IMG/VR virus record: IMGVR_UViG_3300031997_000001
Location: 124,001-188,000 of that record
Reading direction: 5' to 3' (one strand)
Length of the DNA: 64,000 nt
The translations under genes were made by a program, and so were the position numbers. Below, one piece after another: positions 3,339 to 7,586 of this stretch (the stretch's first letter is position 1; each line of letters starts with the position of its first letter). The notes beneath the pieces were generated by a model that made no database searches, was not told the DNA's origin, and saw only the letters and a program-made list of their open reading frames with translations.

Positions 3339-3577
3339 GCTATCCGATTTACGAACTGATGATCCGCCGCGGTCGGGAAGTGGGCGTATTCGGCGTCGGG
3401 CTGGTGCCGATGCAGAATGCGGACCCAGATCCCCAGACGTTTAGGCATCAATACTATTACAACACGCGCGAGAACATCCTCTACAAGAAGACGCAAGGTA
3501 ACGGAGGCGTTCCGTTCTGGAAGCGAACTTCGACTCCGGCATGCGCTCCGCCAGCCAGGTCCATTCCGCCGAGGTAA
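3335..3577 (+). CDS. Hypothetical protein
   Basis: ATGA overlap with upstream gene. Confidence 0.6.
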   Translation: MSYPIYELMIRRGREVGVFGVGLVPMQNADPDPQTFRHQYYYNTRENILYKKTQGNGGVPFWKRTSTPACAPPARSIPPR

Positions 3578-3579
3578 CC

Positions 3580-3813
3580 GTGCCCAGCGTATTCGTGTAC
3601 TGCCGCGGAGACATAAAAGAGTTCCAGTGGCCAGCGAGCAAGACAATTGGCGAAGCAGCTGTGGAGGCATCGAAAGCGTTTGATTATGCGCGTCCGCCGG
3701 ACATTCCACATTTTCAAGATCTCGAAGATCTCGTCCTCCAGCAATCCGATACCTTTACAAAGCTAGGGACCAGGGATGGGGATAGCTTCTTGCTCATAGC
3801 ACTTTTCTCATAG
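3580..3813 (+). CDS. Ubiquitin-like (beta-grasp) protein
   Basis: GTG after GAGGT; KTIGE...LVLQQSDTFTKLGTRDGDSFLLI resembles the Ubl TLxxxGIxDGxxLxL pattern; no terminal GG. Confidence 0.5.
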   Translation: MPSVFVYCRGDIKEFQWPASKTIGEAAVEASKAFDYARPPDIPHFQDLEDLVLQQSDTFTKLGTRDGDSFLLIALFS

Positions 3814-3837
3814 CAATTGGCGGCAGTATCTAAATAC

Positions 3838-3866
3838 TTGACAAACCGGATACCCTGTGGTATAAT
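3838..3866 (+). promoter_or_regulatory. Consensus sigma70 promoter with extended -10
   Basis: TTGACA(3838-43)-17 nt-TATAAT(3861-66), TGG before -10. Confidence 0.9.
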
Positions 3867-3892
3867 TGCGTGTGAAAGGAGGGAAAGAGGGA

Positions 3893-4092
3893 GTAGGGAA
3901 ATGCCGGTCCTGACGATTCCTCACAGACGTGTCCCGTATGTGAGGGGAGAAAAGCGAAGATTAAGTATCTGCACGTTCAGTGCAGTAGTTCCGGCGGGTG
4001 TCCGGCAAGTAGCCCGTGCAAGCGGGAACTCTCAGCGTGAGAGAACACCACTCCGTCGTCGTCTGTCATCGTCAGGATCGACATCTCCCTAC
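3893..4092 (+). ncRNA. Putative structured RNA / 5' leader (~200 nt)
   Basis: 25-bp closing stem 3893-3917/4068-4092 enclosing several hairpins including a GCAA tetraloop; directly downstream of promoter. Confidence 0.6.
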
Positions 4093-4140
4093 ACGCCGTC
4101 CAAAGCAGGCAAGCGTTCAACCACCAGAAGGGAGGGGCGT

Positions 4141-4539
4141 ATGACCTAGGTTGCCACCCATTTCTACGTCATCGTCCGGACCGACATCTCACTCCCTCAG
4201 CAGATCGTCCAGGCTGTCCACGCCGCCCATGACGCAGGCCGTGTAGTATCCTCTGATGGACGCTTTTCCACCGTCGTCTGCCAGGTCCCTTCCGAACAAC
4301 ACCTGCTCCACGAGTACGATCGTATCACCTCCAGGGGTATTCGGTGCTTCCTGTTCAGGGAGCCAGACATGGGCGGTCAGGCAACGGCCCTGGCTACCGA
4401 ACCCACCGCCAATAGGAAGTTCTTTTCCCGGTTTCACCTTTGGAAAGGAGACAACCATGTTGTAGGCAAGAGGACCGCCGTTGCTTGTCCCGACAACTTG
4501 TCCGTTTCCACGTCCTCAGTTATTGGAGACAAGCAATGA
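4141..4539 (+). CDS. pth2: Peptidyl-tRNA hydrolase, Pth2 family, with in-frame TAG at codon 3
   Basis: SD GGAGGGG, ATG ACC TAG, then 129 open codons: FYVIVRTDISLPQQIVQAVHAA...CFLFREPDMGGQATALAT; absent from ORF track. Confidence 0.8.
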
Positions 4540-4817
4540 TTCTCACCACCGAGCAGTGGGATGCCGTCCAGGCGATGAAGGCGGAGATCAAGGGCCTGGC
4601 CGAGACCCAGAAGAAGGAGAAGGCCATCCTGCGGACCCCGCATTTGAACATCCGCGTGCCTGATGGAAAGGGTGGCTTTTACGGTCCCTGGCACTTCCAG
4701 TGGGAGACCCACAAGAGGGCCAGGCTGATCACGGAGCACCTGATTGAGTACAATAAGGCACGCGGGAAGGACTTCTCCATGTACCTGGGGAAGCAGAAGG
4801 CGGAGGCAAATGGTTGA
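4536..4817 (+). CDS. Hypothetical protein
   Basis: SD GGAG; ATGA overlap with pth2 stop; MILTTEQWDAVQAMKAEIKGLA. Confidence 0.75.
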   Translation: MILTTEQWDAVQAMKAEIKGLAETQKKEKAILRTPHLNIRVPDGKGGFYGPWHFQWETHKRARLITEHLIEYNKARGKDFSMYLGKQKAEANG

Positions 4818-4843
4818 CCCCGATAGTACCTCCGTAGTATAAT
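4814..4843 (+). promoter_or_regulatory. sigma70-like promoter for tRNA
   Basis: TTGACC-18 nt-TATAAT. Confidence 0.75.
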
Positions 4844-4849
4844 GTGGTT

Positions 4850-4870
4850 GCGGGACCGGCGTCCCGCTTT
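4850..4870 (+). terminator. GC hairpin + TTT immediately 5' of tRNA
   Basis: GCGGGAC-CGGC-GTCCCGC-TTT. Confidence 0.45.
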
Positions 4871-4944
4871 GCACCCATAGCACAATGGTAGTGCTGCGAA
4901 CTCTAAATTCGCGAATGAGGGTTCAATTCCCTCTGGGTGCACCA
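4871..4944 (+). tRNA. Amber suppressor tRNA (anticodon CUA)
   Basis: Cloverleaf GCACCCA/TGGGTGC, D GCAC/GTGC, anticodon arm GCGAA-CT CTA AA-TTCGC, T arm GAGGG-TTCAATT-CCCTC, encoded ACCA. Confidence 0.95.
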
Positions 4945-4968
4945 CTTTGAGGATACCTTGGAGGCCCG

Positions 4969-6891
4969 ATGTCTGATCTGATCCCGAAGGACAAAAAGCA
5001 AGCGGAACAACTGCCCCCGGACGGGCCGCTGATCGAACTTGGCCAGTGGTATTGGATCGATGACAATGACGACAAGGGAATCCTGCGCAAGAAGAGCTTC
5101 TTCGCTTGCGTGACCAAGATCGGGTCCAACTTCATCGAATGTCATAATCCCTTTGGTTCGTATACCCGCATCCATCTGGACAAGCTTTTGGATGAGTGTA
5201 GGTTGGAGCCTGAGCCCGAGAAGATCATCCGCGAACAGATGATGAAGTACCGAAGGGAAGTCCAGGAGAAGCTCGGCGAGATCAAGAACATCATGGCCAG
5301 GCTCGGACTTACGGAACTCCCCAAGCTCGGACACAATGCCCAGCCCCAGGAAACGAGCAAGGCTCTCTCCGTCATCGCGGCCTCAGAGGACGTGAACCAG
5401 TACAAGAAGAAGCTTATCGAGGCCAAGGAGAAGGATCTCCCCGCGCTGTTCGAGGAAGTGAAGGAGGCCAACGAGAAACTGGCCACTTGGATGCAGGCCC
5501 AGGCGCTTCCCATGGAGGCGGCGTCCGAAGAGCTGGAAGAGCGCCTGGGCCAGATCGACGACCGCATCTTCAACGTCTCGCTCTATGCCGGACTGACCGA
5601 GGACGTCAAGCAGGTCTCGGACGGGAAGCCGGCAGACAGCACGGATAGGCTTCACATCCTCCAGCGCCTCCTCTACATGGACGAGGAGTGCCTGCTGGAT
5701 TACAAGCACGGCGGCATGGAATTCAGCAATATCAAGAAATTCGATGCCTGGCTGGCCAAGCCCGGCAACCGCGACCGTGTCCTACCGTTCCCCAGGTCCA
5801 TCGTCGCCTTCCGCGTGCGCCGCGACGAGAAGGAACGCGATTATGATGGAAGCCTTGCCCAGGCCATGATCATCTTCGATCTGAAGGAGCTTGACAAGCT
5901 GACGTTCCTTTACATCCGGAATGGCGAGCGGCTCTACCGGATGAACTGCGACCTGGAATTCGGCAATCTGATCTTCCCCGGCCAGCACGAGCTCAATCTT
6001 TCCGAGCCCATGATGGCGAAGATGTTTTGCAGCCGGGTCAATGAAATCATCCCCAAGAGGGAGTTCGAAGACCTCGTCGTGAGGGAAAAGGAAAGGGTCG
6101 TCAAGGAGAAGGAGTGGAGGAAAGTAAATCCTGGTAAGAGCTGGATAGAGAATCCGTTTCACGAGTGGAGCGATAAGACCAGAGACTTTGAGCCCTTTGA
6201 CAAGACGAGCGTCTATTTCGATGAGATGAGCGCGGAGGTAGCCAAACGGATCAAGCAGTACAACCGGATCGCCGTCATCGTCCAGGGCCTGTTCGACCGT
6301 TCTGAGGTCCTGCATCCGCACCCGCCCGTCCAGCTATGGTCGCCGGGTGGCTTCGCTGCTGCCGTCGAGCTCGTTTATGACGGATCCAACACCCTGCATT
6401 ATGGAGACGCTCCGGACTTCGAGGCCTATCGTCTCGAGTGCAATAAGACCTTAAAGGAAGGCTCGATCGTCGTCGGCCAGCATGGCTATTGGCTGAATAA
6501 GGAAGTGGAGAGGGAACAGAATAGGCAGGAGAATAACTGGCGGTATAAGAACCCGCACGTGTCCGCGGCGTGGTATAAGCCCCCGGGGAATCCGGGTCCT
6601 GGCTATGTGGCTAAGGTGGCTTACTGGTTCCCCAAGAAGCGTCTCGCCGTGTTCAGGTGGATGCGCGAGCGGCAGGCGTTTGGGCGATATAATGATGGCG
6701 AGCTGATCCCCACTTCTGTTGCGGTGCCGGACACTCACCTGTTCAATGTGAGCGCCTATAAGCCCGGAGACTATAAGCAGTTCTTCATCGATCCGAGGAC
6801 ACGCGCTCAATACCTGAAATGGGCACGCATGCTGCTGGCTGCTGAGGATTACTTCTCAGGGCACATTAAAGTCGGGGAAGCTCCAGAATGA
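4969..6891 (+). CDS. Large hypothetical phage protein with N-terminal coiled coil
   Basis: 640 aa, SD GGAGG. Confidence 0.8.
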   Translation: MSDLIPKDKKQAEQLPPDGPLIELGQWYWIDDNDDKGILRKKSFFACVTKIGSNFIECHNPFGSYTRIHLDKLLDECRLEPEPEKIIREQMMKYRREVQEKLGEIKNIMARLGLTELPKLGHNAQPQETSKALSVIAASEDVNQYKKKLIEAKEKDLPALFEEVKEANEKLATWMQAQALPMEAASEELEERLGQIDDRIFNVSLYAGLTEDVKQVSDGKPADSTDRLHILQRLLYMDEECLLDYKHGGMEFSNIKKFDAWLAKPGNRDRVLPFPRSIVAFRVRRDEKERDYDGSLAQAMIIFDLKELDKLTFLYIRNGERLYRMNCDLEFGNLIFPGQHELNLSEPMMAKMFCSRVNEIIPKREFEDLVVREKERVVKEKEWRKVNPGKSWIENPFHEWSDKTRDFEPFDKTSVYFDEMSAEVAKRIKQYNRIAVIVQGLFDRSEVLHPHPPVQLWSPGGFAAAVELVYDGSNTLHYGDAPDFEAYRLECNKTLKEGSIVVGQHGYWLNKEVEREQNRQENNWRYKNPHVSAAWYKPPGNPGPGYVAKVAYWFPKKRLAVFRWMRERQAFGRYNDGELIPTSVAVPDTHLFNVSAYKPGDYKQFFIDPRTRAQYLKWARMLLAAEDYFSGHIKVGEAPE

Positions 6892-7586
6892 ATACAAGAC
6901 TCCCGCCGAACGACAAGTTCCCGCGGATCCGCCACTTACCATGGAGCCCCGGCGTCTCGAAGGACGACCTGGTCGGGGATTCGTTCTTCTTCCTCGACTC
7001 CCCAATAGCCTGTACCATCAGTGAGAAGATGGACGGCAGTAACGTAGCGCTCACGCGTGATGCCGTCTTCGCACGGACACACGCCCATCCGCCGACTCAT
7101 TCGTCTTTCAATGCACTCAAGGCGCTCCATGTCTCCATCAGACACTGCATACCAGAGGGGTTCACCGTCTTTGCCGAATGGTGTTGGGCGGTGCATTCCC
7201 TGGTCTACAAGAAGCTGCCCAATCCGCCTCTCTTTCTGATAGGCGTACGATCAGAGGTGGCGTCCTGGTCGAGCCAGCTCGAGCCCGGCACCTGGTTGGA
7301 TGTGCCTCGCTGCAAAGAAGTTGCTGAGCAGATCGGCATTCCGATGGTGCCTATTATCTGGCAGGGCCAGCTTCTCGCGCCGCGCGACACGATGGACGGA
7401 CTTCAGAACACGCTCAATTATCCGCCAGCTTATGGGCCGGAGCGCGAGGGATTCGTCATTCGGTACAGCGGGACCATACGGGATGCCGACTGGGACAAGC
7501 TCGTCGCCAAGTGGGTCCGTGCAGGTCACGTCACCACGGACGAACATTGGACAGTCAATGCAGTCAAGAGGCAGAGGACAGCATGA
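6888..7586 (+). CDS. ATP-dependent RNA ligase family protein
   Basis: Motifs SEKMDGSN, FAEW, REGFVIR, AKWVRAGH. Confidence 0.8.
   Translation: MNTRLPPNDKFPRIRHLPWSPGVSKDDLVGDSFFFLDSPIACTISEKMDGSNVALTRDAVFARTHAHPPTHSSFNALKALHVSIRHCIPEGFTVFAEWCWAVHSLVYKKLPNPPLFLIGVRSEVASWSSQLEPGTWLDVPRCKEVAEQIGIPMVPIIWQGQLLAPRDTMDGLQNTLNYPPAYGPEREGFVIRYSGTIRDADWDKLVAKWVRAGHVTTDEHWTVNAVKRQRTA

What the first reader, a model, noticed from the sequence alone, without database searches (positions are those of the whole stretch)
3838..4140. ~200-nt multibranch RNA between a perfect promoter and the amber-gated pth2
Seen: 3893-3917 pairs with 4068-4092 (25 positions, 2 mismatches, 1 G-U). It encloses CCTCACA/TGTGAGG, TGCAC/GTGCA, CGGCGG/CCGTCG and a junction GGTGT/ACACC carrying CCCGT-GCAA-GCGGG and CTCTCA/TGAGAG hairpins. 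The GNRA loop and promoter favour the + strand. I cannot assign it to tmRNA, RNase P, SRP or 6S. Inference: a new ncRNA or a cis-regulatory leader of the pth2/tRNA unit.
Basis: partly seen in the sequence, partly recalled or inferred. Interest (0 to 1): 0.65.

Follow-up and report, generated by a model that had tools for sequence, protein, structure and literature searches.

The report
Transposon (TnpB) relic in pth2 leader
The folded ~200-nt stretch in front of the phage's pth2 gene is real, but it is a recent 242-base insertion: the decayed tail of a TnpB transposon gene held between two opposed copies of a short pth2 segment, not a new conserved RNA.

Summary
Arms 3893-3917 and 4068-4092 form the best inverted repeat in the 64-kb window, and it encloses several short hairpins. 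Rfam matches nothing.

The interpretation as a new ncRNA is not supported. The window lies in a 235-kb jumbo-phage record from sediment metagenomes. Three close relatives share the same upstream gene and promoter but go straight from the ribosome-binding site to ATGACCTAG. More distant pth2-like loci also lack the element. It is therefore a lineage-specific 242-nt insertion (3885-4126) into the pth2 ribosome-binding site.

The interior (3918-4040) is a frameshifted fragment of a tnpB gene:
- It carries the zinc-ribbon motif SSQTCPVCEGR and a GNSQ/..SA* C-terminus.
- A variant copy in other sediment runs continues into a clear TnpB TNB domain (Pfam E = 4e-7).
- In intact elements this stretch also encodes the ωRNA guide-RNA scaffold.

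The 3' arm is a copy of pth2 codons 10-19 from a different allele. It starts exactly after the IS608-type TTAC target. The 5' arm is its inverted duplicate.

The phage has no TnpB or TnpA. One carrier has a 3-nt deletion that breaks a hairpin. The most likely reading is a transposon fossil co-transcribed in the 5' UTR, with at most incidental effects. Interest is modest.

The parts
3838..3866 (+). Sigma-70-type promoter: TTGACA, 17-nt spacer, TATAAT, with a TG extension. It drives the leader, pth2 and orf93. It is shared with relatives that lack the element.
   Evidence: 12 of 12 matches; conserved in L024, L025, L026 and L003.
3874..3884 (+). Original pth2 Shine-Dalgarno region GAAAGGAGGGA. 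It now lies 257 nt upstream of the start. It is the left copy of an imperfect 11-nt direct repeat that flanks the insertion.
   Evidence: The empty sites in L024 and L025 read TGCGTGTGAAAGGAGGGAC(G/A)TATGACCTAG.
3885..4126 (+).
   Evidence: Alignment A3 with the empty-site relatives. It is a single copy in the 235-kb genome.
3887..3917 (+). Inverted copy of pth2 codons 10-19. Its reverse complement reads ATC GTC AGG ACC GGC ATT TCC CTA CTC CCT. Positions 3893-3917 form the 5' arm of the closing helix. It contains ATG 3901.
   Evidence: 31 nt against 4170-4198, with 3 mismatches and a 3-nt gap.
3918..4040 (+). tnpB pseudogene fragment. Frame 3 reads SSQTCPVCEGRKAKIKYLHVQC... (TNB zinc ribbon). 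Frame 1 reads VRQVARASGNSQ (4003-4035). Frame 3 ends ..LSA and TGA (4038-4040). This matches the clade C-terminus ...MRQPVADGNS[L/Q]SA* but is 4 nt short. All the interior hairpins lie here. In intact elements this stretch also encodes the ωRNA scaffold.
   Evidence: PF07282, E = 0.098; best site in the genome; variant context, E = 4e-7; 11 of 18 identities with the Cohnella TnpB; (clade HMM, E = 0.005, best of 9215 six-frame pieces).
4041..4064 (+). The 24 nt between the tnpB stop and the pth2-derived copy. It may be a remnant of the transposon right end. No TCAA lies at its end.
   Evidence: This assignment is an inference.
4065..4126 (+). Direct copy of a diverged pth2 allele from codon 10 onward: GTC ATC GTC AGG ATC GAC ATC TCC CTA ..., which reads VIVRIDISL.HAVQSRQA. 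It begins exactly where pth2 follows its T(T/C)TAC motif, which is the position of an ωRNA guide or flank. Positions 4068-4092 form the 3' arm. GTTCAA at 4115-4120 may be a chance match or a displaced right-end TCAA.
   Evidence: 23 nt, 91%; 26 nt, 3 mismatches; codon table; AGG, TCC and CTA are shared with the inverted copy and are synonymous differences from all resident alleles.
4127..4137 (+). Second Shine-Dalgarno region GAAGGGAGGGG, the right copy of the 11-nt repeat. It now serves pth2.
4141..4539 (+). pth2-like gene with TAG at codon 3 (4147-4149). The site TTC TAC|GTC at 4162-4170 corresponds to TTT TAC|GTC in L003 and L024, which is an IS608-type TTAC target. Codons 10-19 (4168-4198) are the source-like sequence of both arms.
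   Evidence: PF01981, E = 4e-4, below the cut-off.
4871..4944 (+). tRNA with anticodon CUA (amber suppressor), with its own promoter at 4814-4843. Given as context for the amber-gated pth2.

Best explanation
The element is a molecular fossil of an IS200/IS605-family (IS608-like, TTAC-targeting) TnpB transposon. It is not a dedicated RNA gene.

What is left is the last ~120 nt of tnpB, from the zinc ribbon to the stop, plus 24 nt downstream. In intact elements this part also encodes the ωRNA (reRNA) scaffold. It is followed by ~26-60 nt of the DNA that once flanked the transposon's right end. That flank is a pth2 allele, entered right after its TTAC at codon 9/10, which is where an ωRNA guide would lie.

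An inverted duplicate of that flank now sits on the left side. Together the two copies form the 25-bp closing helix.

The whole 242-nt piece lies inside the ribosome-binding region of the resident pth2, at a mosaic (recombination) breakpoint. An SD-like repeat at its right end keeps pth2 translatable.

It is transcribed from the consensus promoter as a long structured 5' UTR. Any effect, such as a somewhat more occluded ribosome-binding site or a possible RNase III substrate, is incidental.

Shown: the insertion, the tnpB homology, the pth2-derived arms and the absence of TnpB/TnpA from the phage. Inferred: the order of events, transcription, and the lack of function.
For: 1. Insertion. L024, L025 and L026 share the upstream gene and promoter (97-99% identity upstream for L024) but read ...GAAAGGAGGGACGT-ATGACCTAG. 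L003 and ten more distant pth2-like loci also have short leaders.

2. tnpB relic.
- The only Pfam hit of the frame-3 peptide is PF07282. This is the best PF07282 site in the genome.
- Logan contigs from other sediment runs carry 3916-3951 and 3959-4006 at about 94% identity in a different context. Read in the same frame, that context gives YGAIEVNEAYSSQTCPVCEGRSKHRRIFLCK, which scores 30.5 bits (E = 4e-7) against PF07282, above the cut-off.
- The Cohnella TnpB (PF07282 at 7e-25, PF01385 at 4e-11) aligns PAYTSQTCPVCEKRNKAI with the window's PDDSSQTCPVCEGRKAKI.
- Its clade ends ...GNS[L/Q]SA*, as the window does across a frameshift.
- The clade HMM ranks this site first of 9215 six-frame pieces, E = 0.005.

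3. That clade is flanked by TTAC on the left and ends in TCAA. The pth2 copy in the element starts exactly after T(T/C)TAC in pth2.

4. Both arms share AGG, TCC and CTA. These are synonymous differences from all five resident alleles, so the arms come from another pth2 allele.

5. The phage genome has no PF01385 and no PF01797.

6. Carrier L023 has a 3-nt deletion that breaks a hairpin. The interior fold is barely better than shuffles.

7. Background from the literature. The reRNA is about 150 nt from the 3' end of tnpB plus the right end, followed by ~16 nt of flank. IS608 targets TTAC (PMC8612924).
Against: - The window's own fragment is below Pfam's cut-off (13.3 against 26.3 bits). The strongest domain hit rests on a composite peptide built from 30-letter loose-end consensus strings of short Logan contigs plus a window block that differs at 2 unknown positions.
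- No TCAA lies at the proposed right-end junction (4061-4064 is GTCT).
- No left end was found.
- The inverted duplicate has no demonstrated mechanism.
- The intact donor element was not recovered, so an insertion into pth2 after TTAC is inferred, not seen.
- The first 26 nt of the direct copy are far better kept (88%) than the next 35 nt. This could mean selection on the helix, which would argue for some function.
- Frame 1 is open across the whole element and in frame with pth2 (roughly a 4% chance by my estimate).
Confidence: 0.68

Rival explanations
1. It is a cis-regulatory leader. The 5' arm can pair either with the 3' arm (a decoy) or with pth2 codons 10-19 in the mRNA. This could switch, or permanently dampen, translation of the amber-gated pth2. 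Alternatively, the 25-bp helix could be an RNase III processing site that sets mRNA stability.
For: - Duplex energies are -38.6 kcal/mol (arm with arm) and -32.5 kcal/mol (5' arm with the coding sequence at 4165-4198).
- In the 389-nt fold, the purine-rich 5' end pairs with CUCACUCCCUC in the coding sequence and encloses the ribosome-binding site.
- The cost of opening SD to AUG+5 is about 13 kcal/mol here, against 6.3-9.5 in the four empty-site leaders.
- The arm sequences are better preserved than the rest of the pth2-derived copy.
Against: - The element is absent from all relatives, which express the same gene from 15-16-nt leaders. It therefore cannot be a required regulator.
- The decoy arm is transcribed first and is the more stable partner, so no trigger for switching is evident.
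- No ligand-binding or protein-binding motif and no Rfam hit were found.
- No expression data exist; no RNA runs hold the stretch.
Confidence: 0.15
2. It is an orphan ωRNA-like guide RNA or a decoy. The retained piece (147 nt of tnpB tail plus a 26-nt flank copy) has the extent of a mature ωRNA and is expressed from a strong promoter. It could load a TnpB supplied by the host or by a co-infecting element and direct it against rival pth2 alleles that carry TTAC. Alternatively, the guide/anti-guide hairpin could soak up or neutralise such guides and protect the resident pth2.
For: - The boundaries and size match the published reRNA architecture (PMC8612924).
- The guide-like copy starts right after the TTAC position.
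- The resident allele has TTCTAC rather than TTTTAC and differs from the copy at 2 of the first 20 positions.
- Gene-less PATE-like elements that encode ωRNAs used in trans are described (bioRxiv 10.1101/2023.03.14.532601).
Against: - No TnpB is present in the phage.
- The covariance model of the nearest identified TnpB clade's ωRNA does not match the element. Neither do Rfam's models.
- Relative to the intact variant, 120 nt are missing inside the would-be scaffold.
- The guide would be locked in a 25-bp helix.
- It matches no known allele perfectly.
- Carrier L023 has a hairpin-breaking deletion.
Confidence: 0.08
3. It is protein-coding. ATG 3901 opens an 82-codon frame that ends at the same TAG (4147) as pth2 codon 3. 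This would give a small basic protein or, with amber suppression, an N-terminally extended Pth2.
For: - The frame is open and in phase with pth2.
- A GGAG lies 8 nt upstream of the ATG.
- The two indels seen are multiples of three: -3 in L023 and +120 in the Logan variant.
Against: - The codon-usage score is -0.28. True genes average +0.32 (sd 0.28), and only 3% of real coding windows score that low.
- No relative was found in the 5.8-billion-protein word search within 0.55-1.75 times the query length, and there is no Pfam hit.
- The frame reads tnpB and the pth2 copy out of their own frames.
- The +120 indel is explained by the tnpB frame of the variant.
- The ATG lies inside the 25-bp helix.
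Confidence: 0.05
4. It is a genuinely new structured ncRNA or ribozyme class.
For: The fold z-scores are -3.8 and -5.1. It has a GNRA-type loop and a consensus promoter, and there is no Rfam match.
Against: - It is restricted to one near-clonal lineage.
- The interior is homologous to a protein-coding gene.
- The interior fold is not significant on its own.
- The helix is explained by duplication of pth2 sequence.
Confidence: 0.03

Closest known systems
IS608 / ISDra2-type IS200/IS605 elements with TnpB and their ωRNA (reRNA)
   Same: - The interior carries the TnpB TNB zinc-ribbon motif and the clade-typical C-terminus ...GNS.SA*.
- The retained stretch is the 3' end of tnpB, which in intact elements encodes the ωRNA scaffold.
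- It is followed by flank-derived sequence that starts right after a TTAC-type target. This matches the TTAC-left, TCAA-right elements of the Paenibacillaceae clade and IS608 (PMC8612924).
   Different: - There is no RuvC domain, no TnpA and no left end.
- No TCAA lies at the junction, and the reading frame is broken.
- The clade's ωRNA covariance model and Rfam find nothing.
- The flank copy is duplicated in inverted orientation. This is not a feature of these elements.
PATE-like non-autonomous IS200/IS605 derivatives (gene-less elements that may still encode an ωRNA)
   Same: It is short, has no gene and derives from transposon-end sequence. It might retain an ωRNA-like transcript (bioRxiv 10.1101/2023.03.14.532601).
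   Different: PATEs keep both subterminal palindromic ends, stay mobile and are multi-copy. This piece is single-copy, lacks a recognisable left end, and looks like a recombination scar.
MITEs (miniature inverted-repeat elements)
   Same: It is about 250 nt long, has long inverted repeats and is flanked by an imperfect 11-nt direct repeat.
   Different: - The right arm ends 34 nt before the insertion boundary.
- The arms are copies of the neighbouring gene.
- There is only one copy in the genome.
Structured phage leaders processed by RNase III (for example the lambda N leader and T7 early mRNA sites; from general knowledge)
   Same: A long, nearly perfect helix in the 5' UTR of a phage operon, directly behind a strong promoter.
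   Different: Those leaders are conserved, functional parts of their operons. This one is absent from the nearest relatives, and no processing has been shown.

Membership tests
IS200/IS605-family TnpB element (as a relic) | TnpB TNB / zinc-ribbon domain (Pfam PF07282) | tested here: met
   - The window's frame-3 peptide has PF07282 as its only hit, but below the cut-off (13.3 bits, E = 0.098).
- It is the best PF07282 site in the genome.
- The clade HMM gives E = 0.005, rank 1 of 9215 pieces.
- The ~94%-identical variant context scores 30.5 bits, above the 26.3 cut-off (E = 4e-7).
- 11 of 18 residues are identical to a bona fide TnpB.
The feature is met for the homologous variant and sub-threshold for the decayed window copy alone.
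IS200/IS605-family TnpB element (as a relic) | RuvC nuclease core (PF01385) in the same ORF | tested here: not met
   No PF01385 match anywhere in the phage genome. Everything upstream of the zinc ribbon is missing from the relic.
IS200/IS605-family TnpB element (as a relic) | Clade-typical C-terminus and stop (...MRQPVADGNS[L/Q]SA*) | tested here: met
   The window reads VRQVARASGNSQ in frame 1 and ..LSA-TGA in frame 3. This is the same ending, 4 nt short.
IS200/IS605-family TnpB element (as a relic) | Insertion 3' of a TTAC target (TAM), with flank sequence following the right end | tested here: met
   The pth2-derived copy starts at GTC, exactly after TTTTAC in L003 and L024 and after TTCTAC in the window, L025 and L026. 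The related clade is flanked by TTAC.
IS200/IS605-family TnpB element (as a relic) | Right end terminating in TCAA, and subterminal hairpins at the left and right ends | tested here: inconclusive
   Positions 4061-4064 read GTCT, not TCAA. A GTTCAA lies at 4115-4120, beyond the pth2 copy. No similarity to the left end was seen.
IS200/IS605-family TnpB element (as a relic) | Y1 transposase TnpA (PF01797) in the element or the genome | tested here: not met
   No match in the phage genome.
TnpB ωRNA / reRNA | Encoded by the 3' end of tnpB plus the right end, followed by a flank-derived guide | tested here: met
   The feature is met by position. Positions 3918-4064 are the tnpB tail plus 24 nt, and the flank-derived copy starts at 4065. 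The architecture follows PMC8612924. This is a positional match only.
TnpB ωRNA / reRNA | Match to an ωRNA covariance model | tested here: not met
   - Rfam 15, which includes the TnpB-associated models named, gives no hit up to E = 10.
- Model R1 (44 pairs) was built from 26 ωRNA regions of the nearest identified TnpB clade. It gives no hit in 3885-4126 with filters off.
- ωRNA scaffolds differ between clades, so this result excludes only those models.
TnpB ωRNA / reRNA | Cognate TnpB protein available | tested here: not met
   None is present in the 97%-complete phage genome. The host is unknown.
Conserved cis-regulatory leader or riboswitch, or new ncRNA family | Presence in related loci, with structure kept by covariation | tested here: not met
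   - It is absent from L003, L007-L018 and L024-L026.
- The carriers (L002, L020, L022, L023) are about 99-100% identical.
- L023 carries a hairpin-breaking 3-nt deletion.
MITE / PATE | Multiple copies, with inverted repeats or palindromic ends at the termini | tested here: not met
   It is a single copy in the genome. The right arm is 34 nt inside the boundary.
Protein-coding ORF 3901-4149 | Coding-like codon usage and protein relatives | tested here: not met

The most novel reading that the evidence does not exclude
This would be a phage-borne orphan ωRNA module without TnpB. A strong promoter drives an RNA that keeps the tnpB-tail scaffold and a pth2-matching guide, paired to an anti-guide.

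It could act in two ways. It could borrow a TnpB from the host or from a co-infecting element to cut rival phages' TTAC-bearing pth2 alleles, much as viral mini-CRISPR arrays borrow host Cas proteins. Or it could act as an RNA decoy that shields the resident pth2 from TnpB homing. The resident allele's TTC-TAC in place of TTT-TAC would fit self-protection.
Probability: 0.07. Interest if true: 0.8.

Novelty: new member of a known kind. Interest (0 to 1): 0.3.

Why it matters
For the scan, this removes a candidate new ncRNA. A striking fold between a perfect promoter and a gene turned out to be a transposon scar plus a local duplication.

Three points are of moderate interest:
1. It is sequence evidence that an IS608-like TnpB element, whose guide region matches a phage gene, has been active in a jumbo-phage lineage. 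It entered the amber-gated pth2 that sits beside a suppressor tRNA.
2. It shows what such a fossil looks like: the ωRNA-coding tail and the guide or flank survive and are transcribed.
3. The target-derived inverted duplicate is unexplained. It could be a repair scar of RNA-guided cleavage.

If the orphan-guide or decoy reading were true, it would be a new kind of inter-phage conflict.

Tried and rejected
- Rfam at gathering scores and at E <= 10 found nothing in the element.
- blastn of 3500-5000 against 50,697 phage records found no match.
- Exact-pattern scans of IMG/VR with an interior pattern, and with a 30-mer from the variant context, returned only the near-identical contig or nothing.
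- A search for the element's DNA in five related phage records gave only chance-level short matches.
- The word-based protein search with the 82-aa ORF gave no hit. It sees only proteins of 45-143 aa.
- IMG/VR scans with the relic and variant peptides returned only T4 gp32-like zinc-finger proteins. These were rejected as unrelated.
- Two of the three genome-contig hits were also unrelated: a UvrA-like protein and a methyltransferase-like protein.
- A hammerhead reading of CUGACGA...GAAA was rejected by inspection. The motif is fully paired in the long helix, and Rfam is silent.
- T-box, retron, group I intron / IStron and tRNA-like readings were considered. No Rfam support, reverse transcriptase or T-loop was found.
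- Genome-wide TAG recoding was rejected. TAG ends 85 of 244 long ORFs, and coding coverage barely changes. The TAG=Q code was used only to read pth2 through its conserved amber codon. The residue actually inserted is unknown.
- The covariance model of the Paenibacillaceae ωRNA did not hit the window.
- A tandem-duplication model (103-nt unit) was not supported by eye. The 27 nt before 4065 show 5 of 27 matches to 4141-4167, and similarity fades after 26 nt.
- Read laying was given 1,501 letters.
- Typed letters were limited to two 30-nt strings and one 31-aa composite peptide. All were taken output plus the window.
- The 1.84-billion-protein HMMER search, structure prediction and complex prediction were not used. 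The family scans had already settled the identity.

Full report
**Context**

The window is bases 124001-188000 of a 235,458-bp virus record that is estimated 97% complete. Near-identical DNA is held by sediment metagenome runs, and no RNA run holds it. The genome uses the standard code. TAG ends 85 of 244 long ORFs, and reading TAG as sense hardly changes coding coverage.

Around the finding all genes lie on the + strand, in this order:
- several genes with no Pfam match;
- a 90-aa ORF at 3541-3813;
- a 12/12 sigma-70 promoter at 3838-3866;
- the element;
- a pth2-like gene starting at ATG 4141 with TAG as codon 3 (PF01981, E = 4e-4, below the cut-off);
- a 93-aa ORF;
- a second promoter at 4814-4843;
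- a tRNA with anticodon CUA at 4871-4944;
- a 640-aa ORF;
- an RNA ligase (PF09414, E = 4e-17).

Arms 3893-3917 and 4068-4092 pair over 25 positions with 2 mismatches and 1 G-U. This is the best inverted repeat within 400 nt in the whole window, and the duplex energy is -38.6 kcal/mol.

The region 3870-4140 folds at -106.6 kcal/mol (z = -3.8) on the + strand and at -105.5 kcal/mol (z = -5.1) on the - strand. The interior 3918-4067 alone is only marginal, with z = -1.9 and -2.2. The significance therefore lies mostly in the long helix. The two mismatches become G-U pairs on the - strand, so base pairing does not favour the + strand. Only the promoter and the gene orientation do. Rfam 15 finds nothing in the element, even at E = 10.

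**It is a lineage-specific insertion**

Searches with the pth2 protein retrieved four kinds of locus:
- near-identical contigs that carry the element (L002, L020, L022, L023);
- three contigs (L024-L026, pth2 82-84% identical) that share the window's upstream gene and promoter;
- L003 (84% identical);
- ten more distant pth2-like loci.

In L024 and L025 the sequence runs TATAAT-TGCGTGTGAAAGGAGGGAC(G/A)T-ATGACCTAG. L026, L003 and the distant loci also have leaders of about 15-25 nt or abutting genes.

In the window, 242 nt (3885-4126) sit between GAAAGGAGGGA (3874-3884) and a second, imperfect copy GAAGGGAGGGG (4127-4137), which now serves as the ribosome-binding site. The element occurs once in the genome. 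Carrier L023 lacks 3 nt (TGC), which removes the 3' half of the CTGCAC/GTGCAG hairpin. No diverged carrier exists, so covariation cannot be tested.

Identity between the window and L024 falls across the element. It is 99% and 97% upstream, 87% in pth2, and 95% in the next ORF. The element therefore sits at a mosaic breakpoint.

**The arms are copies of pth2**

The 3' arm region 4065-4090 matches pth2 4168-4193 at 23 of 26 positions. The reverse complement of 3887-3917 matches pth2 4170-4198 with 3 mismatches and a 3-nt gap.

Read as codons, the direct copy gives VIVRIDISL and the inverted copy gives IVRTGISLLP, against the resident VIVRTDISLPQ. Both copies share AGG, TCC and CTA where all five resident alleles have CGG/CGC, TCA and no extra codon. 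These differences are synonymous, which points to another functional pth2 allele as the source, not decay of the resident one.

The direct copy begins exactly at the GTC that follows TTT-TAC (L003, L024) or TTC-TAC (window, L025, L026) in pth2.

**The interior is a broken tnpB tail**

Laying Logan contigs of four other sediment runs on the region showed short contigs that hold 3916-3951 (2 differences) and 3959-4006 (3 differences) in a different context. They have other sequence before 3916 and 127 other letters in place of 7 after 3951.

Reading the reported flanks together with the shared block in frame 3 gives YGAIEVNEAYSSQTCPVCEGRSKHRRIFLCK. This peptide matches Pfam PF07282 (Cas12f1-like/TnpB TNB zinc-ribbon domain) at 30.5 bits (E = 4e-7), above the cut-off.

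The window's own frame 3 reads GNAGPDDSSQTCPVCEGRKAKIKYLHVQC...KRELSA*. PF07282 is its only Pfam hit, at 13.3 bits and sub-threshold. This is also the best PF07282 site in the phage genome.

A scan of species genomes for the peptide pattern SQTCPVCE returned a bona fide TnpB in Cohnella suwonensis (PF07282 at 7e-25, PF01385 at 4e-11). It aligns with the window at 11 of 18 residues over the zinc ribbon.

Thirty relatives in its family all end ...INIMRQPVADGNS[L/Q]SA*. The window reads VRQVARASGNSQ in frame 1 and LSA-stop in frame 3 over the same bases. This is the same C-terminus, 4 nt short. An HMM of the clade's last 62 residues ranks the window piece first among 9,215 six-frame pieces of the phage genome, E = 0.005.

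The phage has no RuvC-type TnpB core and no Y1 transposase.

**Link to the ωRNA**

In these elements the guide RNA (reRNA/ωRNA, about 150 nt) is encoded by the 3' end of tnpB and the right end. It finishes with ~16 nt of flanking DNA. IS608 inserts 3' of TTAC, and TnpB cuts 15-21 bp from that motif (PMC8612924).

The Paenibacillaceae clade behaves the same way. Its copies are flanked by TTAC on the left and end in TCAA. From ~30 nt before the stop to the right end they share a structure of 42-44 pairs, of which 17 show compensatory changes.

By position, the window's 3918-4064 (147 nt) plus the flank-derived copy from 4065 reproduces this layout. However, a covariance model built from that clade (R1) finds nothing in the element with filters off, and Rfam finds nothing either. 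The scaffold of the true donor clade is unknown, and the intact variant has 120 nt more inside this stretch. Calling it an ωRNA is therefore a statement about position and origin, not a demonstrated membership.

**The coding rival**

ATG 3901 opens a frame that stays open to the TAG at 4147 and is in phase with pth2. Its codon-usage score is -0.28. Real genes of this phage average +0.32 (sd 0.28), and only 3% of real coding windows score as low. It has no Pfam hit and no relative in the word-indexed protein search within its length band. The in-frame +120 indel of the variant is explained by the tnpB frame.

**The regulatory rival**

The 5' arm can also pair with the resident coding sequence at -32.5 kcal/mol. 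The computed cost of opening the ribosome-binding site is about 13 kcal/mol here, against 6.3-9.5 in four empty-site leaders. This allows a dampening effect on pth2 translation, and a 25-bp helix is a plausible RNase III substrate (an inference). Relatives manage the same operon without the element, so any such effect is secondary.

**Most likely history (inferred)**

1. An IS608-like element entered a pth2 allele after TTAC at codon 9/10.
2. Recombination between pth2 alleles placed its right-hand remnant in front of an intact pth2.
3. Deletions removed the left end and most of tnpB.
4. An inverted duplication of the flank produced the helix.

The mechanism of the inverted duplication and the exact right-end junction remain open. 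There is no TCAA at 4061-4064, and a GTTCAA lies at 4115-4120.

**Verdict**

It is a new instance of a known kind, a decayed IS200/IS605 TnpB/ωRNA remnant, not a new RNA class.

Noticed in passing
window 4141-4149; L003 3983-3991; L009, L010, L013, L014, L024-L026 just upstream of or at the match start: The pth2-like gene carries an in-frame TAG within its first few codons in many diverged phage lineages (ATGACCTAG, ATGACTTAG, ATGAGCTAG, ATGGAACACTAG). No alternative start lies downstream. In the window, L003 and L012 an amber-suppressor-type tRNA (anticodon CUA) lies nearby. The amber gate on this gene therefore looks like a conserved design, although the genome as a whole uses TAG as a stop.
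   Followed up: partly
L041-L072 (Paenibacillaceae genomes), about 30 nt before the tnpB stop to the TCAA right end: This TnpB clade has a well-conserved ~165-nt ωRNA region with 42-44 predicted pairs, 17 of them with compensatory changes. Rfam 15 gave no match on the Cohnella copy, even at E = 1. The elements are flanked by TTAC on the left and end in TCAA.
   Followed up: partly
window 3541-4539, frame 1: Frame 1 is open for 333 codons apart from two TAG codons (3811-3813 and 4147-4149). It runs through the upstream ORF, the promoter, the element and pth2. This is probably chance combined with the amber-gated start, but it would matter if suppression is efficient.
   Followed up: no
window 3575-3830, compared with L025 and a Logan contig of run X11: Some relatives lack 256 nt covering the 3' part of the upstream 90-aa ORF, and go straight from ...CCATTCCGCC to the promoter. 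In L026 the same stretch is only ~75% identical. The region upstream of the promoter is itself an indel and mosaic hotspot.
   Followed up: partly
window 4814-4944 and 6888-7583: The suppressor tRNA has its own near-consensus promoter (TTGACC, 18-nt spacer, TATAAT). About 2 kb downstream there is an RNA ligase (PF09414). Together with pth2 this looks like a tRNA and translation-maintenance module.
   Followed up: no
empty-site leaders of L024, L025, L026 and L003: Even without the insertion, the Shine-Dalgarno region is predicted to pair with pth2 codons ~9-13 (GGAGGGACGT with ACGTC..TCC). The opening cost is 6-9.5 kcal/mol, which suggests an ancestral hairpin that occludes the ribosome-binding site in this operon.
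   Followed up: partly
L034, L036, L037 (IMG/VR): T4 gp32-like single-strand-binding proteins share the heptapeptide QTCPVCE with the relic. This is a reminder that the zinc-knuckle motif alone is not diagnostic for TnpB.
   Followed up: yes
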